Below, in pieces: positions 2,899 through 17,794 of a stretch of DNA of 64,000 nt. The notes beneath the pieces were generated by a model. The model worked only from the letters and a program-made list of their open reading frames with translations, did not search any database and was not told where the DNA came from. The DNA lies in sequence record MN988522.1. One strand, given 5' to 3'. The position numbers were made by a program, and so were the translations under genes. Numbering within the stretch: position 1 is the first letter of the stretch; each line of letters starts with the position of its first letter.

Positions 2899-4417
2899 AT
2901 TCGTTGTAAGTTCTGACGTTGTTAATCCGTACAAGGTTATCTATCACGATGAGATGCCTACAGACGATGGTAGTGGAGATAAAGATCAGGAGTATAAGGA
3001 CGCTACTGATGAGTATAGTGGTGACGTAATTAAATCTAAATCACCTAAACTGAAACCTCCTGAAGAAGCTCCTATTCCTGGTATGGAGAATAAAAGACCT
3101 CAGACTCAAACTATTCTAGGGTCTAATAATCCTCCAGAAGAAGATCCTCCTCCACCTCCTCCTGGTCCAACTATGGAAGAGCCTGACGATACTCCTGATC
3201 CATCTCAACCTCCTCCACCTGATGCTCAATCATCTGATGATAAGACCACTAAGGATCCGTTGAATCAAAATCCTCCTACTCCTTCAGATGACTCTGATAG
3301 TGAATATGATGACGATGATTTCGAAGATGGAGGAGACATTGAAGGAGATGATCCAGATGCTCTACCTGATCCTTCACGACCGTCTAATCGTAAGTCAGGT
3401 GATTCGTCTATAGATAGTAATCCTGATGATACTGGATTTACTTATCCGACTTCTTTCGATGATCTTGAAGATACTGACAGTGAAACAGGTGAGACTGGAG
3501 ATATAGAATCTGAAGATGCTGAACCTGATCCATTCGATGGTATGTCTGACGAAGAAATTCGTAAGGCTATTGAGAATGCTCAGGATGACATGTCAGATGA
3601 TGTCAAAGATACTCAACAGCAGATCGATCAATCTAAAGAAGATCTAGCTTCTATGAAACGTGTCGGCAATGGTATGAGTGGAGGAGGTGCCTCTGGTATC
3701 AGTCTTCTATCTCGTGCTAGTGCTGAGAAATTCACTAATCTTATGAAGCCATTCGATCAGTGGATCCGAGATCTGAAAGGTAAAGCTGGTCAGAATCTTG
3801 TTTACAGTACTGATACTGTTTCAAGACGTGTCAAAGGACTATTCGGACGTGAGATCGACTCTGATAGTCACAAGGGTAAGGAACTGGACAAGGTTCTAGC
3901 TATTGTGTATGATACCTCAGGCTCGATGAACGCTAAGTTGATGACCAAAATCAGTAGTAGTCTGTTCTACAAATTGACTCGTGAAAAGATTGTCAAGTAT
4001 ATCTTGCCAATTCACTTCGACGGTAGACTACCTACAAAATTCTATCGTGCTACTGAAGCTACTCCTGAGATCGAGAAGATGCTCAAGAATGGCTCGGGAT
4101 CATATATCCAACCTGCTTATCGTCAGTTGGAGAAATTGATCCGTGAGAATAAAAGCAAGATGAAGGTATCAGGTATTGTTATCATCTCAGACTATGATAT
4201 CTTCGATGCTGTAAAGCTACCAGACGATTTGTACAAAGAGTTGAAGGATATTCCGATCTTCTGCTTGCTAGTGGCAGACAGGAAACTGACTCCAACTAAT
4301 ACGTCATTAGCTACTAAGTATAAGAATCAGTCTGGTCTAGATAGCAAGATGACTTTTGCTCTATTCGATGGATTGAACGTGAAAATGTTCATGAGAAACG
4401 GAAAAGTTTTGTCATGA
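2891..4417 (+). CDS. VWA-domain protein with long acidic/Pro-rich N-terminal linker
   Basis: MIDAS motif IVYDTSGSM; IVISDY; ~250 aa D/E/P low-complexity region. Confidence 0.7.
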   Translation: MARFVVSSDVVNPYKVIYHDEMPTDDGSGDKDQEYKDATDEYSGDVIKSKSPKLKPPEEAPIPGMENKRPQTQTILGSNNPPEEDPPPPPPGPTMEEPDDTPDPSQPPPPDAQSSDDKTTKDPLNQNPPTPSDDSDSEYDDDDFEDGGDIEGDDPDALPDPSRPSNRKSGDSSIDSNPDDTGFTYPTSFDDLEDTDSETGETGDIESEDAEPDPFDGMSDEEIRKAIENAQDDMSDDVKDTQQQIDQSKEDLASMKRVGNGMSGGGASGISLLSRASAEKFTNLMKPFDQWIRDLKGKAGQNLVYSTDTVSRRVKGLFGREIDSDSHKGKELDKVLAIVYDTSGSMNAKLMTKISSSLFYKLTREKIVKYILPIHFDGRLPTKFYRATEATPEIEKMLKNGSGSYIQPAYRQLEKLIRENKSKMKVSGIVIISDYDIFDAVKLPDDLYKELKDIPIFCLLVADRKLTPTNTSLATKYKNQSGLDSKMTFALFDGLNVKMFMRNGKVLS

Positions 4418-4419
4418 GA

Positions 4420-4447
4420 AGCGAAGAGGAGGGTGCATAGCCTTCCT
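4420..4447 (+). promoter_or_regulatory. conserved motif AGCGAA-N13-AGCCTTCCT, copy 1
   Basis: agcgaa gaggagggtgcat agccttcct, 9 nt before tRNA-Ser; also folds as a hairpin. Confidence 0.7.
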
Positions 4448-4456
4448 CTCTTGTCA

Positions 4457-4546
4457 GGAGAGGTGGCCGAGTGGTTGAAGGCACCTGACTACTAATCAGG
4501 CATACGAGCAATCGTATCGTGGGTTCGAAACCCACCCTCTCCGCCA
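4457..4546 (+). tRNA. tRNA-Ser(ACU), type II, unusual A34
   Basis: Stem CCTGA/TCAGG, loop CT-ACT-AA, long variable arm, G73, encoded CCA. Confidence 0.85.
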
Positions 4547-4568
4547 ATTATTAAGAATTGACTTACAT

Positions 4569-4991
4569 ATGTCTATTAGTTTGTATAACTACAAGATCAA
4601 CGTCATTCGAGTTATCGATGGCGATACGATTTATGCAGAAATTGATCTAGGATTCAATATTCGCATCAAAGATTACATTCGATTTGATGGAGTTGATACT
4701 CCTGAGACTCGAGGATCGACAGCTACTGATTTAGGTCAGTGGGCTAAGATGTATACTAGTCTTTGGCTCAGAGGTCTTGAGGGACAATTTGATGAGTTGA
4801 AGACTCTGAATCTGGATGAGGCTTGGTCTAAAGTACCTCGTTCGGATACAGGTCCATGGCTTACTAATCTTTATCTGGATAGTAAATCATACAATGACCG
4901 TGAGAAATACGGTAGGATCCTCGGATATATCTATCGTAATGAAGCTCTATCTTTGAATACCAGACTGATTCAAGAAGGTCTCAAGAAGTAG
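4569..4991 (+). CDS. thermonuclease/SNase-like nuclease
   Basis: VIRVIDGDT, IRFDGVDTPE, DKYGR-like EKYGRILG motifs. Confidence 0.85.
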   Translation: MSISLYNYKINVIRVIDGDTIYAEIDLGFNIRIKDYIRFDGVDTPETRGSTATDLGQWAKMYTSLWLRGLEGQFDELKTLNLDEAWSKVPRSDTGPWLTNLYLDSKSYNDREKYGRILGYIYRNEALSLNTRLIQEGLKK

Positions 4992-5084
4992 GAGAATTCT
5001 AATGGGTGACGATTCTAGCATCATACTTTAACCTGTAGGTTCATACAGAAGAGGATCTCCTCTTTACCTACAGGTAAGGAGAGT

Positions 5085-5369
5085 ATGATGGATAAGTTCA
5101 ATAGAGCAGTACGTAGACATCATCGTAAACGTCTACGTGAAAATAGAAAGATTTACCATGGAGGACTCCAATGGGTGATCGATCGTGAGAAAGCTAAATC
5201 TTTCAGAGTAAATACTCCTACGCCATGTTCATGTCATATGTGTGGCAATCCTCGTAAGTTCTTTAAAGAACTCACAATTCAGGAGCGTAAATTCGCCTTA
5301 GATTACGCGAAGTCGAGCTCCATTAACCTTCCTTATTGTCAGGAGGAATTGTCCTCCGATGATTTCTGA
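5085..5369 (+). CDS. small basic phage protein with CSCxxCGNPR Zn-binding-like motif
   Basis: PCSCHMCGNPRK motif; RBS AAGGAGAG. Confidence 0.7.
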   Translation: MMDKFNRAVRRHHRKRLRENRKIYHGGLQWVIDREKAKSFRVNTPTPCSCHMCGNPRKFFKELTIQERKFALDYAKSSSINLPYCQEELSSDDF

Positions 5370-5397
5370 ACCACTGAAAACTTATTCGGTTGGATTC

Positions 5398-5425
5398 AGC
5401 GAAGTCAGGGTTGGTTAGCCTTCCT
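5398..5425 (+). promoter_or_regulatory. conserved motif copy 2
   Basis: agcgaa gtcagggttggtt agccttcct upstream of tRNA-Lys. Confidence 0.7.
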
Positions 5426-5500
5426 TGTTACGAGGTCGAGGTTTTCGATCTTGAAGAATTCGATTTTTAGAGTACAAGTTTATAAAGAATCTCGTAATAT

Positions 5501-5577
5501 GTACGCTTAACTCAGCTGGATAGAGTAGCGACCTTTTAAGTCGTTGGTCATCGGTTCAAGTCCGATAGCGTACACCA
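5501..5577 (+). tRNA. tRNA-Lys(UUU)
   Basis: Acceptor GTACGCT/AGCGTAC, loop CT-TTT-AA, CCA. Confidence 0.95.
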
Positions 5578-5704
5578 TATTGCATACATTAGAAGACATA
5601 GTTTTTAGAGTAAATTTTGAGTGGTGTGCCTGTACCTATGGTACAGAGTGCTCGGAGATCCTCAGGTAGTTGGCGACTTGAGGATCTCTGCTACACTTTA
5701 TGAC

Positions 5705-5782
5705 GGTCCTGTACGTTCAATTGGATAGACGGCTGGATTTCTACTCCGGAGGTTGGGTGTTCGAGTCACTCCAGGATCGCCA
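5705..5782 (+). tRNA. tRNA-Arg(UCU)
   Basis: Acceptor GGTCCTG/CAGGATC, loop TT-TCT-AC, CCA. Confidence 0.9.
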
Positions 5783-5800
5783 TAAATTGTAGGTTATATT

Positions 5801-6439
5801 ATGGAATGCCCTTATTGTTCTAAGCTCTTTAAGAGTGAGAGATCAATGTCTGGACATAAGGGATTCTGTAAATCAGGACCCTATCGTGCAGATACGATTG
5901 ATCGTAATGCAAAAGCTAAGTTTAAATTAAGAAAAGTCAGACAACCTAGAGGTGTCGACAAGAGGACTCTTCCTGCGTCTTGTAAATTCTGTGACCGAGA
6001 ATTTGAAAATCTATTTCAGAAGAATGGTCATCAAGTTAGATGTGAGAAGAATCCTAATCCAGCTGAATCGTCAGGTCCAATAGGATATAAACACACTGAA
6101 AGTACTCGAAAGAAGCTCTCTGACGCTCGAAGAGCCTTCCTTATTGAGAACCCAGATAAGCAATTCTTCAATTATCGTGATTCTAAAGCAGAGCACGATC
6201 TTGCTAAGAAATTTGATGAAGTAGGTATCCTCTACGTAAGACAGTATCGAGGATCTGACTGGAAGAGAGCTTACAAGGCAGACTTCTATCTTCCAGAGTT
6301 TAATTACATCATTGAAGTTAATGGTGAGTTCAAGTATGAGAACGGTAAGCTGCATCAGTATTACCTAAACCGACAGAGATATATTGAATCATTTGGATAT
6401 AAAGTGATTCAAGTACACGCGTATGAAGTGTACGAGTAG
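5801..6439 (+). CDS. putative homing endonuclease (Zn fingers + NUMOD3-like + DUF559/Vsr-like nuclease)
   Basis: CPYC..H..C and CKFC..H..C fingers; HTESTRKKLS; ADFYLPEFNYIIEVNGEF. Confidence 0.75.
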   Translation: MECPYCSKLFKSERSMSGHKGFCKSGPYRADTIDRNAKAKFKLRKVRQPRGVDKRTLPASCKFCDREFENLFQKNGHQVRCEKNPNPAESSGPIGYKHTESTRKKLSDARRAFLIENPDKQFFNYRDSKAEHDLAKKFDEVGILYVRQYRGSDWKRAYKADFYLPEFNYIIEVNGEFKYENGKLHQYYLNRQRYIESFGYKVIQVHAYEVYE

Positions 6440-6876
6440 TTAAAGTACATCTTGGACATAGCTAGTGAGTTGGTTCTTCGTGAGTCATATCGTTTCTCCT
6501 TTCGGTATGAGTGTATGACAAGCTATGAGTTCTGGCATTCTATCTACCTTTAATCCTTTTCTGTAGATAGAATAACGCACGCGTCAAGATGTTATCCTCG
6601 AAAGTCAGACAGAGGATCTCAGTTTTATAATCTAGATAACGATATGCCCGATCGTTATGTTCCAGTAAGATCAAGTCTTCCTCCCAGACGTCACTCATTC
6701 CCCTCTTGAGTTTATCTTAACGCACGCGCTAGATTATAGGTCTCTGAAAACTGGACAGGAGACCATCAGTTCACTAGGGAGTCAGAAGTATGTAATTCCT
6801 TGTCTTACCTGGAGGTCACATGCGGGTGATCTCGGTTACTTTGAGGTTTACTACTTCTGACTCCTGCCGGATTTAT

Positions 6877-6952
6877 TCTAGGTTAGCCAAGTTGGTAAGG
6901 CACGAGTTTTTGGTGCTCGCATACCTAGGTTCGAACCCTAGACCTAGAACCA
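6877..6952 (+). tRNA. tRNA-Gln(UUG)
   Basis: Acceptor TCTAGGT/ACCTAGA, loop TT-TTG-GT, CCA. Confidence 0.92.
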
Positions 6953-6997
6953 CTTTTTAGATGTTGATTAAGTTCCGTCTAACAATGAGAGAATACA

Positions 6998-7255
6998 ATG
7001 AGTAAAGCATCTGAAGTTATCAAGAAGCTGAATGAGACTAAACCTTCAGAAGATCTTCTGAAGAGCGAGGTCCAGGAAATTAAGCAGAAGATGATTAATC
7101 AAGGCATCGTCAGACCTGACTATGCTGTTGAAAGATTTAGTCTGGTTAGTGATAGATTCAGAAATGTCTTGATACACGGTATTGTTCATGGAACAAATAC
7201 TGCAGGATGGAGAGATCAGATTAAAGATTTGAGATCTCAGAATTTGATTAGTTAG
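6998..7255 (+). CDS. hypothetical protein with MSKA...LNE N-terminal motif
   Basis: 85 aa ORF; stop codon overlaps G1 of tRNA-Gly. Confidence 0.7.
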   Translation: MSKASEVIKKLNETKPSEDLLKSEVQEIKQKMINQGIVRPDYAVERFSLVSDRFRNVLIHGIVHGTNTAGWRDQIKDLRSQNLIS

Positions 7256-7329
7256 CGGACGTAACTCAGAGGTAGAGTGCAATCCTTCCAAGTTTGAAGT
7301 CGTGGGTTCGATTCCCATCGTCCGCTCCA
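7255..7329 (+). tRNA. tRNA-Gly(UCC)
   Basis: Acceptor GCGGACG/CGTCCGC, loop CT-TCC-AA, U73, CCA. Confidence 0.93.
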
Positions 7330-7330
7330 T

Positions 7331-7407
7331 GCATCCTTAGCTCAGTTGGTTAGAGCATCAGTTTTACATACTGAGGGTCACTAGTTCGAGCCTAGTAGGA
7401 TGTACCA
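7331..7407 (+). tRNA. tRNA-Val(UAC)
   Basis: Acceptor GCATCCT/AGGATGT, loop TT-TAC-AT, CCA. Confidence 0.95.
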
Positions 7408-7426
7408 GTTATATTAAACTATTCGT

Positions 7427-7502
7427 GGGAGATTAGTTCAGTGGTTAGAACCGTCAGCTCATAACTGATTAAACAGAGGTTCGAATCCTCTATCTCCTAC
7501 CA
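7427..7502 (+). tRNA. tRNA(CAU), elongator Met or Ile2
   Basis: Acceptor GGGAGAT/ATCTCCT, loop CT-CAT-AA, CCA. Confidence 0.88.
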
Positions 7503-7505
7503 AGT

Positions 7506-7582
7506 ACCACCTTAACTCAGATGGATAGAGTACTCGACCGATAATCGAGTTGTCATTGGTTCAAGTCCAATAGGTGGTACCA
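7506..7582 (+). tRNA. tRNA-Ile(GAU), C at position 33
   Basis: Stem CTCGA/TCGAG, loop CC-GAT-AA, CCA. Confidence 0.88.
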
Positions 7583-7600
7583 ACTTTTATTGAGTAGATA

Positions 7601-8188
7601 ATGAAGTGCAGTTATTGTGAAACTGAGTTTAGACATCTGAGTCGACATGTTAGATATTGTCCTCAGAATCCTGACAGAATTGTCAAGTTAAATCAGTTCT
7701 CTAAGGCTGAGTCATTAGGCTTACCTAAGCCGCCATTGTCTGAGAAATCTCGGAGAATGACTACTGAAAGAAATGCATCTCGAGTATGGACTCCAGAGAT
7801 CAGATCTAAATTATCTAAGAGTATGATTAAGTACTTTAAAGATAATCCTGAAGCTCATCCGTACTTAAAGTATCATTCAAGTGGTGAATCATATGCTGAA
7901 GGATTCTTTCGAGAATTCTTTTTAAGTCATGATTTATCATTCAAACAAGAGTTGCAGGTTGGTCTCTATACACTTGACTTCGCATTTGAGGACAAGATGA
8001 TTGATGTAGAGATCAACGGTAACTTTCACTATAATAATCCTGGAATTGTTGAGAAAGATCAACGACGAAGACTCTTCTTGGAAGAGCGTGGATGGACTAT
8101 TATAGAAGTTCGATGGTCTGAGTATAAGAAGATGAATGAGTCAGAGCGATCTGATTATCTGAATTCCTTATTATCTCAACTATCCTGA
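7601..8188 (+). CDS. putative homing endonuclease (Zn finger + DUF559/Vsr-like nuclease)
   Basis: CSYC..H..C; LDFAFEDKMIDVEINGNFHY; GWTIIEVRW. Confidence 0.75.
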   Translation: MKCSYCETEFRHLSRHVRYCPQNPDRIVKLNQFSKAESLGLPKPPLSEKSRRMTTERNASRVWTPEIRSKLSKSMIKYFKDNPEAHPYLKYHSSGESYAEGFFREFFLSHDLSFKQELQVGLYTLDFAFEDKMIDVEINGNFHYNNPGIVEKDQRRRLFLEERGWTIIEVRWSEYKKMNESERSDYLNSLLSQLS

Positions 8189-8264
8189 CGCGGGATGGCG
8201 CAGTCGGTAGCGCGCAAGAGTCATAATCTTGAGGTCGAGGATTCGAGTTCCTCTCCCGCAACCA
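8189..8264 (+). tRNA. initiator-like tRNA-Met(CAU)
   Basis: C1:A72 mismatch (CGCGGGA/TCCCGCA), anticodon CAT, CCA; lacks the three G-C anticodon-stem pairs. Confidence 0.85.
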
Positions 8265-8525
8265 GTTTCAGTTAACGAGGCCACCGTATCTAGATTAATC
8301 TACCTCACAGGTATCTAGATCGTAGTGAGTTTGAGCGGAGCAGTCTTAACTGCATCGTTGTGGTCCCATCGATAATGCGGTCCCGAGATGGGATAGGACT
8401 CTATCTGAGTGCACAAGGATAGATGCACCTAAGCGGTCTCTGCGATGAGATCCACCGCTCCATAATCTGTAATCTTGATGTGAACAGTGTCGTAGATATC
8501 TCATCAGTAATATCGAGTTAATGAG

Positions 8526-9026
8526 ATGATGTATATCCGATACGCTTTATACTTACCAGTTAATCTACTACTTGTACTGTCAGCATATGTGTTCTCACCT
8601 ATTCTAGCAGCACTTTCTCTAATTACAGGTCCGACGCTCCCTGGAGTACTTCAATGGTTCTCTACTACGGATGACAATCTAGACGGTGGAATTCATCAGA
8701 ATGTCTCAGGCTATAAGTCTGGACTGAAAGGATTCTCACTATGGTGGCAACGTACATGTTGGATCTGCAGAAATCCTGCTCATGGATGGCAGTCTAACTT
8801 ACTAGGTATGTCTGTTGATGGATTCGAATTTATCGAGAAGATCGATATTTCTACTCCTAAATGGTATCTGATGAAGAATAATAAGCATACGTTCTTCATG
8901 TGGAAGAAGGATCAACCACTCTTCTCCAAGTATTATCTGAAACTATGGTTCGGATGGCTGAATACTGCATATGATGGTAAGAATCATCATTATGAATTTC
9001 AGATCGGACTGAAGAGTAAAAATTAA
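8526..9026 (+). CDS. phage membrane-anchored hypothetical protein
   Basis: N-terminal hydrophobic segment; WFSTTDDNLDG...W..RNPA motif. Confidence 0.7.
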   Translation: MMYIRYALYLPVNLLLVLSAYVFSPILAALSLITGPTLPGVLQWFSTTDDNLDGGIHQNVSGYKSGLKGFSLWWQRTCWICRNPAHGWQSNLLGMSVDGFEFIEKIDISTPKWYLMKNNKHTFFMWKKDQPLFSKYYLKLWFGWLNTAYDGKNHHYEFQIGLKSKN

Positions 9027-9036
9027 TATAGGTTAA

Positions 9037-9114
9037 GTCGCTATGACGGAGTGGTCCAACGTAATGGTCTGCAAAACCATATAACCGCTGGTTCGAATCC
9101 AGCTAGCGACTCCA
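9037..9114 (+). tRNA. tRNA-Cys(GCA)
   Basis: Acceptor GTCGCTA/TAGCGAC, loop CT-GCA-AA, U73, CCA. Confidence 0.93.
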
Positions 9115-9124
9115 AGGTTAAACT

Positions 9125-9235
9125 ATGAAGTATGTAATCATTCTAGCACTTCTTCTAGCAGGATGTCAATCTGCTGAAGAGCGTTACTATTCAGATTTGT
9201 CTACAGGTGTAGGCATGGTTCTAAAGGATAAATAA
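9125..9235 (+). CDS. small putative lipoprotein (36 aa, not in ORF track)
   Basis: MKYVIILALLLAGCQS: signal peptide with lipobox LAGC; upstream AAGGT. Confidence 0.6.
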   Translation: MKYVIILALLLAGCQSAEERYYSDLSTGVGMVLKDK

Positions 9236-9352
9236 ATGTCAACTATTATTGTTGCAGTTGTAGCATTCATTGCAGGTGGATACGCTAGTAAGAATTTTGG
9301 ATTCGATCTAGTTGAGTATGCCAAGGCTGCTTATAACAAGTTTAAGGCATAA
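9236..9352 (+). CDS. small membrane peptide (38 aa, not in ORF track)
   Basis: [18 protein letters not shown]..., abuts previous stop. Confidence 0.5.
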
Positions 9353-9361
9353 TGCCTTTGT

Positions 9362-9438
9362 CGGAGCGTAGCGCAGCCAGGTAGCGCAATAGTTTTGGGT
9401 ACTATGGGTCGTCTGTTCGAATCAGACCGTTCCGACCA
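9362..9438 (+). tRNA. tRNA-Pro(UGG)
   Basis: Acceptor CGGAGCG/CGTTCCG, loop TT-TGG-GT, CCA. Confidence 0.95.
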
Positions 9439-9440
9439 AT

Positions 9441-9517
9441 ATTCCCTTGGACAAGCGGTTTAAGTCATCTCACTTTCACTGAGAAGATCACGGGTTCAAA
9501 TCCCGTAGGGAATACCA
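9441..9517 (+). tRNA. tRNA-Glu(UUC)
   Basis: Acceptor ATTCCCT/AGGGAAT, loop CT-TTC-AC, CCA. Confidence 0.93.
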
Positions 9518-9522
9518 ATTTC

Positions 9523-9550
9523 AGCGAAGTTAGGCTCTTGTAGCCTTCCT
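9523..9550 (+). promoter_or_regulatory. conserved motif copy 3
   Basis: agcgaa gttaggctcttgt agccttcct. Confidence 0.7.
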
Positions 9551-9615
9551 TCTTGTATCGGTTAGTAGTGTCAATCCGAGCTATTAATGTGAGTATTAAG
9601 TATCGGATTCTATGA

Positions 9616-9712
9616 TCGAGAGTGGTGGAACGGTAGACACATCCAGATAAAAGAGCAGTTTCTGGACGCTACTTAAATATGCGTGCTAGTTCAAGTCTAG
9701 CCTCTCGAACCA
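9616..9712 (+). tRNA. Leu-type (class II) tRNA-like gene with aberrant 13-nt anticodon loop
   Basis: Acceptor TCGAGAG/CTCTCGA, A73, CCA, Leu-type D arm, T arm; TCCAGA/TCTGGA stem closes TAAAAGAGCAGTT. Confidence 0.75.
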
Positions 9713-9746
9713 ATATTATATGCTCATTCTTAGATAGGGATTACCA

Positions 9747-10508
9747 ATGGGTAAATTACATGAAATCCTCGCGGTTGAAGGTGACCTCGTAGGTGTAGCC
9801 AAGAAAGTTACTGAAGAAGCTATCGCTACGTTCAGCAAGCGTGCAGATCACTTCAGTGAGACTACTACTGAACAGAAATACTTTGCAGACGATGAGCAGC
9901 ATCTCAATACGTCTGAATCTAAGGCAATGGTGACCACTGTACCTGACAAGCTCAAGTACATCGTTGATCCTATTGCTAAGTTCTTCGATGCGTACTATTC
10001 GAAGGAAGCTACCAATCAGATCGCTAAGGCTGACGTAGAAGTCAAGGGTACAACGATCTTTGCAGATGTTCCAGCAACGGTTCTCCTAGGTATGGAGACT
10101 AAGCTTCGTGAACTCCGTAAGGTCTATGAATCGATTCCGACTCTCGCTCCTGGTGTATTCTGGGAGAAGGATGTTAATCGTCCGGCAGGTGTATACCGTG
10201 CTCGTGAACCTGAAGTCCGATTCGTTACGAAGAAGACTGTACGTCCGATCACTCTTTCACCTGCTACTGACAAGCATCCTGCTCAGATTGAGAAGGTCAA
10301 TGAAGATCTTCCTGTCGCTAAGAAGACGATTACTACCTGGAGTAGTATGATGTCGTCAGCTGACAAGAGCAAGGTCCTCGAACGTATCGATACTCTGATC
10401 CGTGCAGTTAAGACTGCTCGTCAGCGTGCAAACGGTACTGAGGCAGTATCTGCTTCATCCTTCGGTGATAAGATTTTCGACTTTATCCATCAAGGTATCG
10501 TCGACTAA
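9747..10508 (+). CDS. conserved uncharacterised protein (KLxxxLAVE / ATDKHPAQ family)
   Basis: 253 aa; motifs MGKLHEILAVE, VPATVLLGME, ATDKHPAQIE, AVKTARQRAN recalled from an uncharacterised family. Confidence 0.75.
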   Translation: MGKLHEILAVEGDLVGVAKKVTEEAIATFSKRADHFSETTTEQKYFADDEQHLNTSESKAMVTTVPDKLKYIVDPIAKFFDAYYSKEATNQIAKADVEVKGTTIFADVPATVLLGMETKLRELRKVYESIPTLAPGVFWEKDVNRPAGVYRAREPEVRFVTKKTVRPITLSPATDKHPAQIEKVNEDLPVAKKTITTWSSMMSSADKSKVLERIDTLIRAVKTARQRANGTEAVSASSFGDKIFDFIHQGIVD

Positions 10509-10691
10509 GAATTGAATGTTGAGGCTACCAGCATAGCCTCCATTCTCCGACTCCCATAGGGACAAACTCAGCCTTAAACTTATTGTGAGTATCAAGAATT
10601 TATCTTCTGCTCAAGATAAACAAACTAGCTTTGTATCCCTAAAACTTAGACAAGATTTACCAGATCTAGTCGTAGCATATCTCTATTTTCC

Positions 10692-10777
10692 CGGAAGGTC
10701 GTGAGTTCGAGTCTCATCACCGCACCCAATTACCTACAATTGGACTGATGCGGTGTAGCTCAGTGGTAGAGCGTTCG
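10692..10777 (+). ncRNA. circularly permuted tRNA-like domain within a ~420 nt non-coding region
   Basis: T arm GTGAG-TTCGAGT-CTCAT, then CACCGCA-C-CCA...TGCGGTG acceptor-like stem, then D arm TA-GCTC-AGTGGTA-GAGC. Confidence 0.8.
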
Positions 10778-10962
10778 TTTTATCTTGAAGATATCCTATC
10801 GATGATGACTGTATGAATCTATCGTAACGATTAAATATGCTCCGCGATAGGAGTGTATGTTACATTAACAAGAACAGGGTGGTTCCATGCGGAATGTGGT
10901 TCCACCCACCTCTTCTTATATAAGATCATTCGGATTTTATATAATAAGAATTTGAGGTTTAC

Positions 10963-11250
10963 ATGAGTAAGGCATCAAGATTACTTAGCAAGATCAATGA
11001 ATTGGACGGTGGATCTAAGGACCCACTGGTTCAATCAGGTTGTGCTAAGATTGTAGCTTATTGTCAGAAGAAGAGTCTTAGTGCTACTGAGATTGAGCAG
11101 ATTAAGGATCAGATTCTTGACGACGAGCCTCTTCACAATCATACTGCAGATACACTAGCTGCAATCGGTCTTGATATGAATATCAAGTCTGAGCTTGTAG
11201 CGATTGGTCTCAGTAGTGATGAAGCTGATGCGATTATGAATGTAACCTAA
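10963..11250 (+). CDS. hypothetical protein with MSKA...INE N-terminal motif
   Basis: 95 aa, RBS GAGGT. Confidence 0.75.
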   Translation: MSKASRLLSKINELDGGSKDPLVQSGCAKIVAYCQKKSLSATEIEQIKDQILDDEPLHNHTADTLAAIGLDMNIKSELVAIGLSSDEADAIMNVT

Positions 11251-11257
11251 CAGACAT

Positions 11258-11331
11258 GCTCCTATAGTTAAGTGGTATAACTCCTGTTTTGTAATCAGGG
11301 TTCCTCAGTTCGATTCTGGGTGGGAGCACCA
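11258..11331 (+). tRNA. tRNA-Thr(UGU)
   Basis: Acceptor GCTCCTA/TGGGAGC, loop TT-TGT-AA, CCA. Confidence 0.92.
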
Positions 11332-11383
11332 TGATTTCTTGAATCCTAACTCATAGTGAGTTAGAGATAACAAGGAAGATAAA

Positions 11384-11680
11384 ATGAGTGATGAAGTTAA
11401 TAAGACTGTCGTAACTAGAGAAGAACATCGAGGTACTGCTTGTAAGTACTATGATACTCGTGGTAAAGCATACGATGCTATTATCACTGAAGTATGGGGA
11501 CCTCAATGCGTCAACCTTGTCTATGTCAATGATGTAGAAGGTCAGAAAGATTCTTATGGTCAGAAATTGATCAGATCATGTTCTGTGATGCATGGTAGTG
11601 TTCAGCAAGCTCATGGCAACTATTGGATGTTACCAGGAGAGACTCGAGTTTCTAAATATGTTCATGATTCAGCTATTTAA
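11384..11680 (+). CDS. hypothetical protein
   Basis: 98 aa, RBS AAGGA. Confidence 0.7.
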   Translation: MSDEVNKTVVTREEHRGTACKYYDTRGKAYDAIITEVWGPQCVNLVYVNDVEGQKDSYGQKLIRSCSVMHGSVQQAHGNYWMLPGETRVSKYVHDSAI

Positions 11681-11745
11681 TTAACTTCTGTGATCTTCCG
11701 ACCTTGACGCGACGAAGTAGCAGATAACTTATAAACTTTCTTGTT

Positions 11746-12333
11746 ATGTTTTATACTATCTATCGAATAACCAACAATGTTAACAGTAAGATATATGTTG
11801 GTATGCACCAGACTACTAATTTAGATGACGGTTATATGGGATCGAGCAGATTATTGTTCAATGCTATGAAGAAGCACGGTCCTGATAACTTCTCTAAAGA
11901 GATTCTACATGTCTTTGATAATAAAGAAGACATGTTTAGTATGGAAGCACAGATAGTAGACGAACAATTTGTTAAAAGATCTGATACATACAACCTAAAG
12001 ACAGGTGGAGTAGGATCTTTTAGCTACATTAATTCATCTCCTGAATTTCGACAAAGGTCAATTTCAAGAATTCGTGAATTATGTAAGTCTGATACACCGT
12101 ATCGTAGAATTCAATCTAATAAATTGAAAGATGTTCGATACGATTTCACTGGTCATAAGCATACTGAAGAATCGATCTCTAAGATGAAAATATCTAAGGT
12201 CGGTCACGGAGAGGGTTCTTCGAATTCTCAGTATGGGACGATCTGGATTAATAATGGAGTGAAGAACTCTAAACTTAAATCTAATCTACCTATTCCAGAT
12301 GGTTGGAGTAGAGGTAGAAAGATGGGCTTGTAG
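11746..12333 (+). CDS. GIY-YIG homing endonuclease (Seg-like) with NUMOD3
   Basis: TIYRITN..KIYVGMH..DGYMGS; GHKHTEESISKMK; WINNG..GWSRGR. Confidence 0.9.
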   Translation: MFYTIYRITNNVNSKIYVGMHQTTNLDDGYMGSSRLLFNAMKKHGPDNFSKEILHVFDNKEDMFSMEAQIVDEQFVKRSDTYNLKTGGVGSFSYINSSPEFRQRSISRIRELCKSDTPYRRIQSNKLKDVRYDFTGHKHTEESISKMKISKVGHGEGSSNSQYGTIWINNGVKNSKLKSNLPIPDGWSRGRKMGL

Positions 12334-12398
12334 TGATAACGGGAGCACGATGCCTTTGCACGGCATAGGACAGGGTTCGATTCCCTGCTAGTCCACCA
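12324..12398 (+). tRNA. tRNA-Ala(UGC)
   Basis: G3.U70 pair, loop TT-TGC-AC, CCA; first 10 nt overlap the GIY-YIG gene. Confidence 0.92.
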
Positions 12399-12450
12399 CA
12401 TTAGGTCGTATCAACCTGAGGTTAACCGTAGTTACTCAAACTGATACAAT

Positions 12451-12537
12451 GGGATTTCAGACGTGTTGGAGTGCGATCGGCAGACTGTAAATCTGTCCTC
12501 TTAGAGCTACTAGGTTCGAATCCTAGAAGTCCCACCA
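12451..12537 (+). tRNA. tRNA-Tyr(GUA)
   Basis: Stem GCAGA/TCTGT, loop CT-GTA-AA, variable arm, CCA; atypical D arm. Confidence 0.85.
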
Positions 12538-12542
12538 TATTT

Positions 12543-12584
12543 ATAGCCTCATATCGGAGCAATCTGGTATGAGGCTATTTCTTT
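12543..12584 (+). terminator. intrinsic terminator
   Basis: ATAGCCTCATA...TATGAGGCTAT hairpin followed by TTCTTT. Confidence 0.75.
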
Positions 12585-12658
12585 CATGTTAAAGAGAGGG
12601 GCGATGTATTATGATCGTTACGACATCTTCTAGGTAAAACAACCTAGGAGTATAAAGC

Positions 12659-12961
12659 ATGAAGTCGCATTATATTAAGTCTGAGAAGTTTCGTTGGAAT
12701 CGAGACGATAAGATCGAATATATTTACAAGCTCAGAGCTGGTAATTATTACCGTGATCTTAAGACCTTTCAGGAGATCTCTGCGAATGAGTTCGTTAAGT
12801 TTGATCCTGACTGTATCGAGTATAAGATTCCTCCTCGTTATGGACGACTTAATCATTACTTGAACAAGTGGAATCTTGAGAGATTTCCTTCTAAGTCTTA
12901 TAAGAAGTCTTGGAAGTTTGCTCACAGATGCCGTAAGCAATGGATGATCAATCTTGAATAA
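12659..12961 (+). CDS. hypothetical protein
   Basis: 100 aa, RBS AGGAG. Confidence 0.65.
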   Translation: MKSHYIKSEKFRWNRDDKIEYIYKLRAGNYYRDLKTFQEISANEFVKFDPDCIEYKIPPRYGRLNHYLNKWNLERFPSKSYKKSWKFAHRCRKQWMINLE

Positions 12962-13139
12962 GATGACATTCGATGATTGGTGTGATCAGGTCGATACTGT
13001 AGCGAGTAAAGCTATGGGAGGACCTGAATCATACACTAAGGCCACTGGCAGAGAATGCTGGATGGATATGTATAACGATGGATTCACTCCTGAAGATGCA
13101 TGGACTGAAGAGTCTTTATGTATTCAGGAGTCCCTTTAA
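12954..13139 (+). CDS. hypothetical protein
   Basis: 61 aa acidic ORF overlapping previous gene. Confidence 0.6.
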   Translation: MNKMTFDDWCDQVDTVASKAMGGPESYTKATGRECWMDMYNDGFTPEDAWTEESLCIQESL

Positions 13140-13157
13140 TTCTAGATGGATAAGTTA

Positions 13158-13301
13158 ATGAATTTTCTCGGTAAAATCTTTTCTGCAGATTCTAAGAAGC
13201 TGGATGACGCGAAGGCTCTTCTTGCAGAAGTAACTGCATCGAAGAATCGTATCATCAATAATGATCTTAAGGGTCGTATTGAGACTTTCTTGAGTGCATG
13301 A
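13158..13301 (+). CDS. small hypothetical protein (47 aa, not in ORF track)
   Basis: MNFLGKIFSADSKKLDDAKALLAEV...; alternative in-frame ATG at 13146. Confidence 0.5.
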   Translation: MNFLGKIFSADSKKLDDAKALLAEVTASKNRIINNDLKGRIETFLSA

Positions 13302-13340
13302 GATAGAAGGCTAAAAGACGCGAATTATTCGCCTAGATTG

Positions 13341-13368
13341 AGCGAACTTAGCGTCTGATAGCCTTCCT
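13341..13368 (+). promoter_or_regulatory. conserved motif copy 4
   Basis: agcgaa cttagcgtctgat agccttcct, 17 nt before tRNA-Asn. Confidence 0.7.
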
Positions 13369-13385
13369 TCTTTGTCAGACGGTGA

Positions 13386-13461
13386 TGGCTAGTAGCTCAG
13401 TTGGTAGAGCATTGCACTGTTAATGCGACGGTCGTAGGTTCGAGCCCTACCTAGTCAGCCA
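13386..13461 (+). tRNA. tRNA-Asn(GUU)
   Basis: Acceptor TGGCTAG/CTAGTCA, loop CT-GTT-AA, G73, CCA. Confidence 0.95.
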
Positions 13462-13484
13462 GTCTGCTTATAAAGGATTCTTAG

Positions 13485-13691
13485 ATGGAACGTGTATATA
13501 GTTTAGTTTATGTTGCTATCATTACAGCAGGTGTAGTCGCAGGTATCACAGCACTCACTCTACCTTTGTACTATGGTACGATTGATAGTAATCGTAAACA
13601 ATCTGAGTTGTCAAGTAAGTGTGTTGACTCAGGAGGGTCCTGGATCGTAGGTCCTAATGGATACTACCAGTGTATTGCTGGTCGTAAGTAA
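13485..13691 (+). CDS. small membrane protein
   Basis: N-terminal TM helix; C-terminal CVDSGGSW...C. Confidence 0.65.
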   Translation: MERVYSLVYVAIITAGVVAGITALTLPLYYGTIDSNRKQSELSSKCVDSGGSWIVGPNGYYQCIAGRK

Positions 13692-13700
13692 TGTGAATAA

Positions 13701-13792
13701 GGATAGTTGGCTGAGTCTGGTCTAAGGCGCTCGACTTGAAATCGAGAGGACGTGAGAGCGTTCCGTGGGTTCGAATCCTACACTATCCGCCA
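13701..13792 (+). tRNA. tRNA-Ser(UGA)
   Basis: Acceptor GGATAGT/ACTATCC, loop CT-TGA-AA, long variable arm, CCA. Confidence 0.95.
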
Positions 13793-13810
13793 TATTTATT
13801 ATTGAGTATA

Positions 13811-14197
13811 ATGGATCAAATAGTAAAGAAAAAGAGGACTAGACGTCCTGTTTCTTTAGAGACTAGAATGAAATTATCTGCTGCTCTTAAGGGTAAACCT
13901 CAGAGTAAAGTTTCTAATGAAGAGATTTTTGCAGATAATACTACTCATCCTAGACATCGTATTAAAGAAAGAATAATTCGAGATAATCTTATTCCATACG
14001 AGTGTGCAATCTGTGAAAATGATGGTACATGGAATGGTGAACCTTTATCTTTACATCTAGACCATGAAAATGGTAAGAATAATGATAATCGTCTTGAGAA
14101 TCTTAGATTCTTATGTCCTAACTGTCATAGTCAAACAGATACTTATGCAGGTAAGAATAAGAAACGTAAGAGAATCAAGAGAGAAGAGCGTGTTTAG
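13811..14197 (+). CDS. HNH homing endonuclease
   Basis: CAIC..LHLDHENG..NDNRLENLRFLCPNCH; start moved from 13736 (inside tRNA-Ser) to ATG 13811. Confidence 0.9.
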   Translation: MDQIVKKKRTRRPVSLETRMKLSAALKGKPQSKVSNEEIFADNTTHPRHRIKERIIRDNLIPYECAICENDGTWNGEPLSLHLDHENGKNNDNRLENLRFLCPNCHSQTDTYAGKNKKRKRIKREERV

Positions 14198-14261: not shown

Positions 14262-14297
14262 ATTCTAGATATTAAATAAACACTTGGATAAGAAGAA

Positions 14298-14942: not shown

Positions 14943-14952
14943 TTGACAGTAT

Positions 14953-15037: not shown

Positions 15038-15043
15038 AATTAT

Positions 15044-16225: not shown

Positions 16226-17794
16226 ATGGCTTCGATCAATAATAAGTCAGTTGCTAATCTTGCACGTACGGTTGCTCCTAAGGCAGTTGTAGCACCTCGT
16301 ACATTCACTGGTTTATCTCATAACATTCGTAACAATAATGGTGCGATGGCGTATGATATCACTCCTATCGAGCAATTGAGACGTACTGTTCTCTCTTGCA
16401 TGCTCTGGGAGGATTCTGCATATGAGTCTGGTGAACAGATTGCTAATCGTATTGAAAGATTGATCGGAGAGTGTGATCCCTCTGATGTAGCACATCTTGC
16501 TCGTGAAGCAAGACATATCATGAAGCTACGTCATGTTCCTCTCTTTATGTGCATCACGATGCTGAAGTATCCCGAACATAAGAAATATGTTCGTAAGACA
16601 CTCGCATCAGTTATTGAGCGTCCTGATGAGCTTGGTCAAGCTCTCGCTCTCTACTGGAAGGATGCTCTTTCTCCTGCTCGTACTACTGAAGATACTGAAA
16701 TCGGACCTCGAGTTACTTACGTTTCTCAGAGAAAGTCTGATCTGAATCTTCCTCTCCAACTACGTAGAGGTCTTGAAGATGCTCTACAGAAGTTTGACTC
16801 TTATCAGTTGAAGAAGTACCTTATGAAGGACAAGCCTGTCTCTATGGCTGACATTCTTCGTATCGTCCACCCTAAGGGTAAGACTGATGAGATCAAAGCT
16901 ACCTATGGCGAAATCGTCAAGGGTACTGCTACTGCACCTGATACATGGGAGTCTCGTCTCTCATCTTCTGGTAGATCTGAGAAAGCTACAATCTTCACAG
17001 ATATGCTCGAACGTAACAAATTAGGTGCAATGGCTCTACTGAAGAATCTGCGTGGTATGACTGAGGCTGGTGTTGATACCAATCTTATTAATACTGCGAT
17101 TCAGAAGATGAATACTGAACGTGTTCTTCCTTTCAGATTCCTCACAGCTGCTCGTCATGCTCCTCAGTTCAAGTCTAGTCTCGGTGAGGCTATGCTAAAA
17201 TCTCTGAAGGACATTCAGAATCTGCCTGGTCATACAGTACTACTGATTGACATCTCAGGTAGTATGGGTGGACGTATTTCAGGTAAGTCTGATCTGAGAC
17301 GTATTGATGCTGCAGCTGCTATTGCTATCATGTTGAAGGAAATTTGTCAGTCTTCTGATATGTTTGTCTTCAATTATGGTACGTATCAAGTACGTAACGA
17401 TAACGTCTTCTGCGTGAATCAACCTACTGCTAACAATCACGGATACTCCAGGATTGTTGAGAGTACGAGGATCTACAATTACGAAGAAGATGCTGTAGTG
17501 AAGAGAGGATTTGATCTATCAGATCTTATCGTCAATTCAGTAGTTGGTGGAACTGATCTCCAGCAAGCTGTCAGTTACATCAATAATACTGTAGAGTATG
17601 ATCGTATGATTATCTTTACAGATGACGAATCATCTACTGTTCCGCCAGCTCCTAGAGGTCTTTCCTATTCGATCAATGTATCGACTGGAAACTATGGAGT
17701 GACGTACGGTGATTATGTCCACATCAACGGATTCTCTGAAGGTGTGATCGGCTATGTCACTGAGTACGACAAGTACGTGAAGAGTCAGAATTAA
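16226..17794 (+). CDS. rsr: Ro60/TROVE-domain RNA-binding protein (TROVE + VWA)
   Basis: EQLRRTVLSCMLWED, LRHVPL, ERPDEL, LQKFDSYQLKKY, TWESRLS, LGAMALLKNLR, RVLPFRF, VWA LIDISGSM, GGTD. Confidence 0.92.
   Translation: MASINNKSVANLARTVAPKAVVAPRTFTGLSHNIRNNNGAMAYDITPIEQLRRTVLSCMLWEDSAYESGEQIANRIERLIGECDPSDVAHLAREARHIMKLRHVPLFMCITMLKYPEHKKYVRKTLASVIERPDELGQALALYWKDALSPARTTEDTEIGPRVTYVSQRKSDLNLPLQLRRGLEDALQKFDSYQLKKYLMKDKPVSMADILRIVHPKGKTDEIKATYGEIVKGTATAPDTWESRLSSSGRSEKATIFTDMLERNKLGAMALLKNLRGMTEAGVDTNLINTAIQKMNTERVLPFRFLTAARHAPQFKSSLGEAMLKSLKDIQNLPGHTVLLIDISGSMGGRISGKSDLRRIDAAAAIAIMLKEICQSSDMFVFNYGTYQVRNDNVFCVNQPTANNHGYSRIVESTRIYNYEEDAVVKRGFDLSDLIVNSVVGGTDLQQAVSYINNTVEYDRMIIFTDDESSTVPPAPRGLSYSINVSTGNYGVTYGDYVHINGFSEGVIGYVTEYDKYVKSQN

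What the first reader, a model, noticed from the sequence alone, without database searches (positions are those of the whole stretch)
6448..6771. Tandem pair of homologous, unexplained structured RNA units
Seen: two consecutive units have different stem sequences but the same architecture. Unit A (6448-6624) closes with CATCTTG(G)AC/GTCAAGATG; unit B (6626-6771) closes with TATAATCTAG/CTAGATTATA. Each encloses two hairpins, then the identical single-stranded AACGCACGC just before the 3' strand (6574-6582, 6719-6727). Each is followed by a hairpin whose loop contains GAAA..GACA (ATCCTC/GAGGAT; GGTCTC/GAGACC) and then TCAGTT. In unit B the loop AACTG could pair with the downstream CAGTT. Conserved loops with compensatory stems are the signature of a functional RNA. 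I do not recognise it as a known riboswitch or ribozyme.
Basis: seen in the sequence. Interest (0 to 1): 0.72.

Follow-up and report, generated by a model that had tools for sequence, protein, structure and literature searches.

The report
Paired orphan structured RNAs in phage
Two neighbouring, related RNA folds sit among the tRNA, Y-RNA and Ro60 genes of a Rhizobium phage; they look like real small non-coding RNAs of an uncatalogued kind, but nothing outside this phage genus resembles them, so their job is still an informed guess.

Summary
The window is Rhizobium phage RHph_TM40 (Cuauhnahuacvirus). Units A (6448-6624) and B (6626-6771) lie in a 437-nt non-coding gap between a homing-endonuclease gene and tRNA-Gln, on the strand of all 20 tRNAs. 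Both have a closing helix of unrelated sequence, an identical TAACGCACGCG junction, a hairpin with a 12-nt GAAA-N4-GACA loop (three compensatory pairs) and a TCAGTT linker. Chance is very unlikely. They match no Rfam family, occur only twice in the 207-kb genome, and have no homologue in the viral, metagenome or genome collections.

New context: 9.5 kb downstream the phage encodes a Ro60 (TROVE) protein preceded by seven unannotated YrlA-like Y RNAs, with another 3.9 kb from A/B. [quoted passage not shown] A covariance model of the phage's Y RNAs that finds Y RNAs in four other phages does not find them.

Best reading, at modest confidence: processed, stable scaffold or decoy RNAs with a conserved 3' handle and variable CU-rich, anti-Shine-Dalgarno-like loops. 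Rivals are base-pairing sRNAs, cis processing or stability elements, and decayed relics. Expression is untested.

The parts
6448..6457 (+). Unit A, 5' strand of closing helix P1 (CATCTTG[G]AC)
   Evidence: Pairs with 6583-6591, 9 bp with one bulge (MFE); chance about 0.009
6461..6536 (+). Unit A, long irregular arm ending in a hairpin with loop UUUCUCCUUU (6493-6502)
   Evidence: MFE and centroid; holds U-G pairs that would be C-A mismatches on the - strand; loop 10/10 pyrimidines
6537..6573 (+). Unit A, perfect 11-bp hairpin with 15-nt loop CUUUAAUCCUUUUCU
   Evidence: loop 13/15 pyrimidines
6573..6583 (+). Conserved junction motif TAACGCACGCG (copy 1), unpaired, just before the P1 3' strand
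   Evidence: Identical to 6718-6728; only two copies in the 207-kb genome
6583..6591 (+). Unit A, 3' strand of P1 (GTCAAGATG)
   Evidence: CGTCAAGAT is also the 3' strand of the closing stem of Y-like unit Y2
6594..6617 (+). Unit A, 3' hairpin: 6 bp, 12-nt loop GAAAGUCAGACA
6619..6624 (+). Linker TCAGTT after unit A; candidate endonuclease (RNase E-type) site
   Evidence: Same hexamer after unit B and after Y2 at 15271; processing role is inferred
6626..6635 (+). Unit B, 5' strand of P1 (TATAATCTAG)
   Evidence: Pairs with 6729-6738, 10 bp; chance about 0.0005
6636..6658 (+). Unit B, 8-bp hairpin with 7-nt loop AUGCCCG, stacked on P1
6665..6718 (+). Unit B, arm closed by AAGAU/AUCUU with two small hairpins, loops UCCUCCC (6679-6685) and UUCCCCUCU (6698-6706)
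   Evidence: loops 7/7 and 9/9 pyrimidines; the only polymorphism in ten genomes (6692 C/T) is unpaired here
6718..6728 (+). Conserved junction motif TAACGCACGCG (copy 2)
   Evidence: unpaired in the centroid structure
6729..6738 (+). Unit B, 3' strand of P1 (CTAGATTATA)
6739..6764 (+). Unit B, 3' hairpin: 7 bp, 12-nt loop GAAAACUGGACA
6766..6771 (+). Linker TCAGTT after unit B
6777..6865 (+). Element C: long, nearly perfect hairpin filling the rest of the gap up to tRNA-Gln; lacks the A/B motifs
   Evidence: -44.1 kcal/mol, z -5.3; + strand favoured by 9 kcal/mol; its 5' strand holds GUCAGAAG, one base from the vertebrate Y-RNA GUCCGAAG (a lead only)
5801..6439 (+). Context: homing-endonuclease gene immediately upstream
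   Evidence: Weak Pfam matches near or below threshold: zinc finger, NUMOD3, DUF559; annotated as homing endonuclease in GenBank
6877..6952 (+). Context: tRNA-Gln(UUG) immediately downstream
10672..10811 (+). Context: solitary YrlA-like RNA (Y0)
   Evidence: Rfam YrlA 35.9 bits, E 3.8e-5, below gathering score
15044..16171 (+). Context: array of seven Y-RNA-like units (5' GTTGCGA, 3' ATCTC, co-varying closing stems)
   Evidence: model R1 scores 54-116 bits here and finds Y RNAs next to Ro60 in other phages
16226..17794 (+). Context: phage Ro60/Rsr homologue (TROVE + Ro60 vWA)
   Evidence: Pfam TROVE E 2.8e-13; annotated 'TROVE domain-containing protein'; homologues in 86 phage records

Best explanation
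A and B are two paralogous small non-coding RNAs, specific to this phage lineage. They belong to the phage's non-coding-RNA island: 20 tRNAs, at least 8 Y-RNA-like RNAs and a Ro60 gene, all on one strand.

Shown: each unit is modular. The conserved 'handle' is the closing helix P1, the unpaired junction AACGCACGC, a 3' hairpin with a 12-nt GAAA-N4-GACA loop, and a UCAGUU tail. The variable body has hairpin loops made almost only of pyrimidines (CUCC, CCUCC).

Inferred: the units are co-transcribed with the neighbouring tRNAs and cut apart in the UCAG|UU linkers, which fit the RNase E-type RN|WUU rule. This would leave RNAs of about 145-175 nt capped by the 3' hairpin. The handle would then be the docking site for one common protein partner. 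The CU-rich loops would hold a second partner: an S1/KH-domain protein such as PNPase or ribosomal protein S1, or purine-rich Shine-Dalgarno-like RNA.

On this reading they work like Y RNAs, as tethers, gates or decoys in an RNP, without being members of the YrlA family.
For: - Real, constrained paralogues: identical 11-nt junction and loop ends around stems of different sequence that still pair. Stems are unlikely by chance.
- Only two copies in the genome.
- Strand: A and C fold about 10 kcal/mol better on the tRNA strand. No ORF over 52 aa lies in the gap.
- The four inner loops are 39/41 pyrimidines, against 54% in the region. Chen 2014 notes pyrimidine-rich loops in the non-tRNA-like Y RNAs.
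- Same island and strand as Ro60 and Y-like RNAs.
- Same plan as Y RNAs: 5' and 3' ends form the basal stem around a variable effector domain.
- Short identities with the Y array at equivalent places: CGTCAAGAT as 3' strand of the closing stem of both A and Y2; the A-to-B linker GATCTCAGTTTTAT against the Y2-to-Y3 linker GATCTTTCAGTTTAT; 15/17 identity of B 6705-6721 with 15270-15286, p about 0.003 for that single test.
Against: - No expression data.
- Only two sequences, so covariation is thin; the shuffle control is reached in 66 of 500 shuffles.
- The Ro60-binding motif (GNCGAA, here GUUGCGA) is absent from the 5' side of A (AUAGCUA) and B (AUAACGA).
- No T or D arm is present.
- Rfam YrlA, Y_RNA and tRNA models do not hit.
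- The Y-array model R1 does not hit A/B, although it finds Y RNAs in four distant phages. An nhmmer profile of the Y 5' ends does not hit either.
- Overall local alignments of A/B to Y units are not significant.
- A/B lie 9.5 kb from Ro60, beyond the 4-kb rule used for Y RNAs.
- No A/B-like module is present in five other Ro60 phage loci.
- The protein partner is unknown.
Confidence: 0.35

Rival explanations
1. A and B are trans-acting base-pairing regulators. Their CU-rich loops (CUCCUU, CCUCC) mimic the anti-Shine-Dalgarno end of 16S rRNA and occlude ribosome-binding sites of host or phage mRNAs. Alternatively the unpaired AACGCACGC acts as a seed. The 3' hairpin serves for stability.
For: Four loops of 7-15 nt are nearly pure pyrimidine and contain CUCC, UCCU or CCUCC. 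Tandem homologous sRNAs with such loops are known in the host's class: the cuckoo/ar14 and CcsR families and AbcR1/2 (own knowledge). Loop A1 pairs at -9.8 kcal/mol with the AAGGAGA site of the ORF at 5085.
Against: The loops differ between A and B, whereas the conserved parts (junction, GAAA/GACA loop) are not anti-SD-like. There is no Rfam ar14 or other sRNA hit at E<=10. No specific target stood out among local start sites. No perfect complement of the junction motif lies on an mRNA-sense strand in the phage. The 3' hairpin lacks a U-tail typical of Hfq-dependent sRNAs.
Confidence: 0.18
2. They are cis-acting spacer structures of the polycistronic transcript. The folded blocks and UCAGUU linkers guide endonucleolytic processing and protect the upstream homing-endonuclease mRNA and the downstream tRNA-Gln precursor from exonucleases, with no function in trans.
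For: They lie between an ORF stop codon (6439) and a tRNA (6877) in a co-oriented gene string. The same UCAGUU-containing linker occurs between Y2 and Y3. Element C is a plain long hairpin 11 nt before the tRNA.
Against: Simple protective hairpins would not need an identical 11-nt unpaired motif and identical loop ends in both copies, nor a 100-nt multi-branched body. Other tRNA spacers in the island are only a few bases long.
Confidence: 0.15
3. They are decaying relics of duplicated Y-RNA-like or tRNA-like genes, or a DNA-level by-product of homing-endonuclease-driven rearrangement, with no present function.
For: Short identities link them to Y2-Y4 stems and linkers. The Ro60-binding motif is degenerate. 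There are no homologues outside one nearly clonal genus. The island contains several homing-endonuclease genes.
Against: Relics would lose pairing, yet both P1 helices are perfect and the hairpin keeps pairing through three double changes. A and B share features that the Y units lack, which indicates selection on a new common module.
Confidence: 0.15
4. They are self-cleaving ribozymes or ligand-sensing riboswitch aptamers of an undescribed class.
For: They combine a conserved junction, a conserved large loop and variable peripheral stems. Their tandem arrangement sits in a transcript that must be processed.
Against: No Rfam ribozyme or riboswitch model matches, even at E<=10. There is no expression platform and no regulated ORF downstream; the next gene is a tRNA. 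No pseudoknot is conserved between A and B. Undescribed classes normally recur in many genomes, and none was found.
Confidence: 0.05

Closest known systems
Bacterial and phage Y RNAs of the YrlA type (Rfam RF02553; Chen et al. 2014, PMC4201824)
   Same: Both are encoded on the strand of a Ro60 gene in a phage ncRNA/tRNA region. In both, the 5' and 3' ends pair into a basal stem that encloses a variable effector domain. Several paralogues per genome are joined by short A/U-rich linkers. A and B share short stretches with Y2-Y4 of the same phage.
   Different: A/B have no GNCGAA/GUUGCGA Ro60-binding motif after the 5' strand and no T-arm, D-arm or acceptor-like domain. They carry an extra 3' hairpin outside the closing stem and their own junction motif AACGCACGC on the 3' side. 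They are not detected by Rfam YrlA or by a model of this phage's own Y RNAs. They lie 9.5 kb from Ro60.
Second-class Y RNAs without a full tRNA-like domain (Salmonella and M. smegmatis YrlB, D. radiodurans Yrn2; Thermus phage phiLo Yrl1/Yrl2, PMC12135203)
   Same: They are small structured partners encoded beside the tRNA-like Y RNA. They are described as hairpins with pyrimidine-rich loops. Phage versions are proposed to recruit host PNPase.
   Different: Those RNAs keep the CGAA-type motif used to identify them. A/B do not, and they are multi-branched rather than single long hairpins. Element C is closer to that shape.
Alphaproteobacterial tandem sRNAs with anti-Shine-Dalgarno loops (cuckoo/ar14, CcsR1-4, AbcR1/2); recalled from memory
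   Same: Both are tandem homologous units with hairpin loops rich in C and U containing CCUCC-like strings, in the taxonomic class of the phage's host.
   Different: There is no Rfam hit. Only one loop (UCCUCCC) approaches the CCUCCUCCC signature. The parts conserved between A and B are not the CU loops.
Stable 'species 1 and 2' RNAs (rnaC, rnaD) of the phage T4 tRNA cluster; recalled from memory
   Same: Both are two small stable non-tRNA RNAs encoded next to a phage tRNA cluster and processed from the tRNA precursor, with function still unknown.
   Different: No sequence or model was available here to compare them. T4 has no Ro60.

Membership tests
YrlA / Y RNA | GNCGAA(N0-1)G-type Ro60-binding motif next to the 5' strand of the basal stem (Chen 2014); GUUGCGA in this phage's own Y units | tested here: not met
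   A has AUAGCUA and B has AUAACGA at that place. The nhmmer profile of the Y 5' ends gives no hit at E<=100.
YrlA / Y RNA | tRNA-like domain (T arm, acceptor-like stem-loop, D arm) | tested here: not met
   Rfam YrlA and tRNA models give no hit in 6300-6876 at E<=10. ARAGORN finds none.
YrlA / Y RNA | Match to a covariance model of the family | tested here: not met
   Model R1, built from seven Y units, scores them at 54-116 bits and finds Y RNAs in CcrColossus, Gurke, Xanthomonas 10KY502B and RsoM2USA. It gives only an E 1.3 fragment inside A.
YrlA / Y RNA | Basal stem formed by the 5' and 3' ends enclosing a variable domain | tested here: met
   P1 of 9 and 10 bp.
YrlA / Y RNA | Encoded within 4 kb of, and on the same strand as, a Ro60 gene | tested here: not met
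   Same strand, but 9.45 kb upstream of Ro60 (16226) and 8.3 kb from the Y array. It is 3.9 kb from the solitary YrlA-like unit Y0.
YrlA / Y RNA | Binds Ro60 and needs it for accumulation | not testable with these tools
   Needs RIP, EMSA or Northern blots.
Known self-cleaving ribozymes (hammerhead, twister, twister-sister, pistol, hatchet, HDV-like) | Match to the family's covariance model and conserved core | tested here: not met
   No Rfam match at gathering score or at E<=10.
Known riboswitch classes | Aptamer model match plus an expression platform before a regulated gene | tested here: not met
   No Rfam match. The 3' hairpin is not terminator-like (12-nt loop, no U run). The next gene is a tRNA.
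tRNA / tRNA pseudogene | Cloverleaf with T and D arms | tested here: not met
Cuckoo / ar14-type sRNA | Two or more hairpins with CCUCCUCCC loops and a model match | tested here: not met
   Only UCCUCCC in one loop. No Rfam hit at E<=10.

The most novel reading that the evidence does not exclude
A and B, perhaps with hairpin C, are a new class of Ro60-system RNA. On this reading the phage diversified a Y-RNA scaffold into a second handle type (AACGCACGC junction plus GAAA-N4-GACA hairpin). That handle recruits a different protein, or binds Ro60 in a different mode, while the CU-rich anti-Shine-Dalgarno-like loops capture S1/KH-domain proteins or ribosome-binding sites. The phage would then carry a whole toolkit of RNP adaptors for taking over host RNA metabolism.
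Probability: 0.12. Interest if true: 0.75.

Novelty: new variant of a known kind. Interest (0 to 1): 0.5.

Why it matters
Phage Ro60/Y-RNA systems are barely understood. Known cases have one or two Y RNAs, and the proposed role is hijacking host PNPase. This phage carries at least eight Y-like RNAs plus the A/B pair in one tRNA island, none of them annotated.

If A/B are stable RNAs with a shared protein-binding handle and different effector loops, they would show that phages evolve families of modular RNA adaptors beyond the canonical Y RNA. They would also give a tractable system, with a lytic Rhizobium phage and a culturable host, to ask what such RNPs do during infection.

If they are only spacers or relics, the finding is an ordinary orphan motif confined to one nearly clonal genus.

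Tried and rejected
- Rfam over the whole window at gathering score and over 6300-7000 at E<=10: only tRNA-Gln.
- blastn 'distant' of the 441-nt gap against 50,697 phage records: only the ten near-identical Cuauhnahuacvirus genomes. They differ at a single unpaired base, so they give no covariation.
- Pattern scans for junction plus loop (plus tail) in viral contigs, metagenome contigs and genome contigs: 16, 11 and 6 stretches, none with a stem around the loop, so all are chance.
- Flanking proteins and Ro60 as single queries in IMG/VR: no relatives.
- Whole-genome scan for further copies: none.
- Descriptor scan of Ro60 loci in CcrColossus, Bambus, Gurke, Xanthomonas 10KY502B and RsoM2USA: no A/B-like module.
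- Rhizobium phage RHph_TM16, which shares DUF7873 and tRNA-Thr synteny: a YrlA-like RNA but nothing A/B-like.
- Membership in the Y family was tested and rejected: nhmmer, covariance model R1 and pairwise alignments.
- Sigma-70 promoter or intrinsic terminator reading of the conserved block: no convincing site.
- Minus-strand RNA: less stable for A and C.
- Group I intron carrying the endonuclease gene: rejected, because both flanking tRNAs are intact and no intron model matches.
- Loop/tail pseudoknot: present only in B.
- A full-unit covariance model of A+B was not built. MAFFT could not put the two P1 5' strands in register, and the model tool searches only sequence already fetched.
- Several further resemblances fall below significance and are reported only as leads: A's hairpin with the acceptor-like hairpin of Y4, UCAGUU with the tRNA D-loop, the junction motif with tRNA-Gln UAAGGCACGAG, and C's GUCAGAAG with vertebrate GUCCGAAG.

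Full report
**Where this is.** The 441-nt stretch around the finding is 100% identical to Rhizobium phages RHph_TM30 and RHph_TM40. A neighbouring 508-aa protein is 100% identical only in TM40. The window is therefore about 124001-188000 of MN988522.1, in the single-genus family Kleczkowskaviridae (Cuauhnahuacvirus).

The finding lies in a 437-nt gap (6440-6876). Upstream is a homing-endonuclease gene (5801-6439; weak zinc-finger, NUMOD3 and DUF559 matches). Downstream is tRNA-Gln (6877-6952). The gap sits inside a string of 20 tRNA genes, all on the + strand. It holds no ORF longer than 52 codons and nothing is annotated there.

**The observation.** Reading the sequence confirms every element at the stated coordinates.
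- Unit A closes with 6448-6457 / 6583-6591: nine Watson-Crick pairs, G6455 bulged.
- Unit B closes with 6626-6635 / 6729-6738: ten pairs.
- The shared unpaired block is 11 nt, TAACGCACGCG (6573-6583 and 6718-6728).
- In register, the two downstream hairpins have loops of exactly 12 nt, GAAAGUCAGACA and GAAAACUGGACA.
- Their stems keep 100% pairing, with three pairs changed on both sides. Slid controls pair at 42-58%.
- By hand, five of the nine comparable P1 pairs are changed on both sides.
- TCAGTT follows each hairpin after one base.

A random 12-mer finds a perfect complement as long as observed within 175 nt in 0.9% (A) and 0.05% (B) of trials. The motif-plus-hairpin module occurs nowhere else in the 207,431-bp genome. 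The whole gap folds with z = -3.6. Unit A gives z = -3.05, unit B -1.9, and a third element, C (6777-6865, a long hairpin), -5.3. A and C are about 10 kcal/mol more stable on the + strand; B is neutral.

The loop/tail pseudoknot exists only in B. The inner architectures of A and B are only loosely alike.

**A new feature inside the units.** The four inner hairpin loops are UUUCUCCUUU, CUUUAAUCCUUUUCU, UCCUCCC and UUCCCCUCU. That is 39 of 41 pyrimidines in a region that is 54% pyrimidine. They contain CUCCUU and CCUCC, the core of the anti-Shine-Dalgarno sequence. The loops of the conserved 3' hairpins are purine-rich instead.

**What it is not.**
- Rfam 15 gives no match at gathering score or at E<=10, and ARAGORN finds no tRNA. 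So it is not a catalogued ribozyme, riboswitch, sRNA, tRNA or Y RNA.
- The conserved block is not a sigma-70 promoter, and the hairpins are not terminator-like.
- It is not a group I intron: the flanking tRNAs are intact.

**Search for relatives.** blastn finds only the ten near-clonal genomes. They differ in the gap by one unpaired base, 6692 C/T. Exact-pattern scans combining the junction motif, the loop ends and the tail returned only chance matches without a stem. This held for IMG/VR, the JGI metagenomes and the GTDB genomes. Flanking proteins have no relatives in IMG/VR. As far as these tools reach, the element is confined to this genus. That limits covariation evidence to one pair of paralogues.

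**The context that changes the reading.** A Pfam scan of the island's ORFs shows that 16226-17794 encodes a Ro60/Rsr homologue: TROVE E 2.8e-13 plus the Ro60 vWA domain. It is annotated 'TROVE domain-containing protein' and has homologues in 86 phage records.

Directly upstream (15044-16171) lie seven tandem units. Each is built as 5'-stem-GTTGCGA ... ATCTC-stem-3'. Two of them hit Rfam YrlA below threshold (36-37 bits, E about 1e-5). Six carry a T-arm. Their closing stems co-vary, with five of seven pairs changed on both sides. An eighth YrlA-like unit lies at 10672-10811.

GUUGCGA corresponds to the GNCGAA / GGUCCGA Ro60-binding motif described by Chen et al. 2014. A covariance model of the seven units (R1) also finds Y RNAs beside Ro60 in CcrColossus, Brevundimonas phage Gurke, Xanthomonas phage 10KY502B and Ralstonia phage RsoM2USA. 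So it is a valid family model. None of these RNAs is annotated.

**Are A and B Y RNAs?** They share the plan:
- The ends form a basal stem around a variable body.
- The loops are pyrimidine-rich, as noted for the non-tRNA-like Y RNAs.
- The linkers are short and A/U-rich.

They also share short stretches at equivalent places:
- CGTCAAGAT is the 3' strand of the closing stem in both A and Y2.
- The A-to-B linker resembles the Y2-to-Y3 linker, including TCAGTT.
- B 6705-6721 matches 15270-15286 at 15/17.
- TTATAATCTAG matches TTATAACCTAG before Y4.

Every formal test of membership nevertheless fails:
- There is no Ro60-binding motif at the 5' side and no tRNA-like domain.
- Rfam YrlA does not hit, R1 does not hit and nhmmer does not hit.
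- Overall pairwise alignments are not significant.
- The distance to Ro60 is 9.5 kb.
- Five other Ro60 phage loci and RHph_TM16 contain no A/B-like module.

I therefore do not file A/B as Y RNAs. A common origin with the Y array is possible but unproven.

**Most likely mechanism (confidence 0.35).** Shown: two constrained, modular paralogues on the tRNA strand, with a conserved 3' handle and variable CU-rich loops, in an island devoted to stable RNAs and Ro60.

Inferred: they are co-transcribed with the tRNAs and released by cleavage in the UCAG|UU linkers. These fit the RNase E RN|WUU preference (Chao et al. 2017, from my own knowledge). The 3' hairpin would then cap the mature RNA. The handle (P1, unpaired AACGCACGC, GAAA-N4-GACA loop) is the natural candidate for a common protein-binding platform. 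The loops would bind a second partner, either S1/KH-domain proteins or purine-rich RNA. This is Y-RNA logic with other parts.

**Rivals.**
- Base-pairing anti-Shine-Dalgarno sRNAs: 0.18.
- Purely cis processing or stability spacers: 0.15.
- Decaying relics of Y-like genes or endonuclease-driven scars: 0.15.
- A new ribozyme or riboswitch: 0.05.

**Verdict.** This is a real and non-random pair of structured elements, probably RNA, uncatalogued and lineage-restricted. Its function is open. Much of its interest comes from the unannotated Ro60/Y-RNA system it sits in.

Noticed in passing
window 16226-17794 and 15044-16171: The phage encodes a Ro60/Rsr (TROVE + vWA) protein preceded by seven tandem, unannotated Y-RNA-like units. 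Each has a 5' GTTGCGA and a 3' ATCTC motif, the closing stems co-vary, and six have a T-arm. This is an unusually large Y-RNA array for one genome.
   Followed up: yes
window 10672-10811; L059 11056-11189: A solitary YrlA-like RNA lies between a DUF7873 gene (9747-10508) and tRNA-Thr. Rhizobium phage RHph_TM16 has the same order, DUF7873 then a YrlA-like RNA then tRNA-Thr, yet was not among the Ro60 hits. DUF7873 may therefore be linked to this RNA.
   Followed up: partly
window 16179-16205: A short hairpin, GCTATG-TTGCGATAGTCCT-CATAGC, carries the GTTGCGA motif about 20 nt before the Ro60 start codon. It could be an autoregulatory Ro60 site or a truncated eighth unit.
   Followed up: no
window 6777-6865: Element C is a long, near-perfect hairpin (z -5.3) just before tRNA-Gln. 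Its 5' strand contains GUCAGAAG, one base from the vertebrate Y-RNA Ro-binding GUCCGAAG. No Rfam Y_RNA hit, so this is only a lead.
   Followed up: partly
window 15765-15829: Rfam calls a tRNA here (33.9 bits) that ARAGORN does not. It is the tRNA-like core of Y-like unit Y5, with D arm before T arm (unpermuted), unlike Y3 and Y4.
   Followed up: partly
L038 4781-4916 (Brevundimonas phage Gurke); L039 4357-4487 (Xanthomonas phage 10KY502B, annotated tRNA-Thr at 4816-4883): In Gurke the Y-RNA model matches just upstream of Ro60 and overlaps the gene annotated tRNA-Ser (4781-4855), so that annotation may be a Y RNA's tRNA-like domain. In 10KY502B the model match (4357-4487) does not overlap the annotated tRNA-Thr (4816-4883); that tRNA lies directly before Ro60 and was not itself tested.
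   Followed up: no
window 5290-5337, 5382-5429, 9520-9554, 13325-13372: A repeat family occurs four times next to tRNA genes: TT.AGCGAAGT.AGG...AGCCTTCCTTCTT, a small hairpin with a pyrimidine tail. It may be a phage promoter, terminator or processing signal.
   Followed up: no
window 6998-7255: An 85-codon ORF between tRNA-Gln and tRNA-Gly is conserved at 100% in all ten genomes but is annotated in none. It has no Pfam match.
   Followed up: no
window 4457-17926: The 20 phage tRNAs cover every amino acid except Asp, His and Phe. One tRNA-Ser has the unusual anticodon ACU.
   Followed up: no
window 5801-6439 and 7601-8188: Two free-standing DUF559/Vsr-type homing-endonuclease genes are wedged directly between tRNA genes. 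An SNase-like nuclease gene (4569-4991) is also in the island.
   Followed up: no
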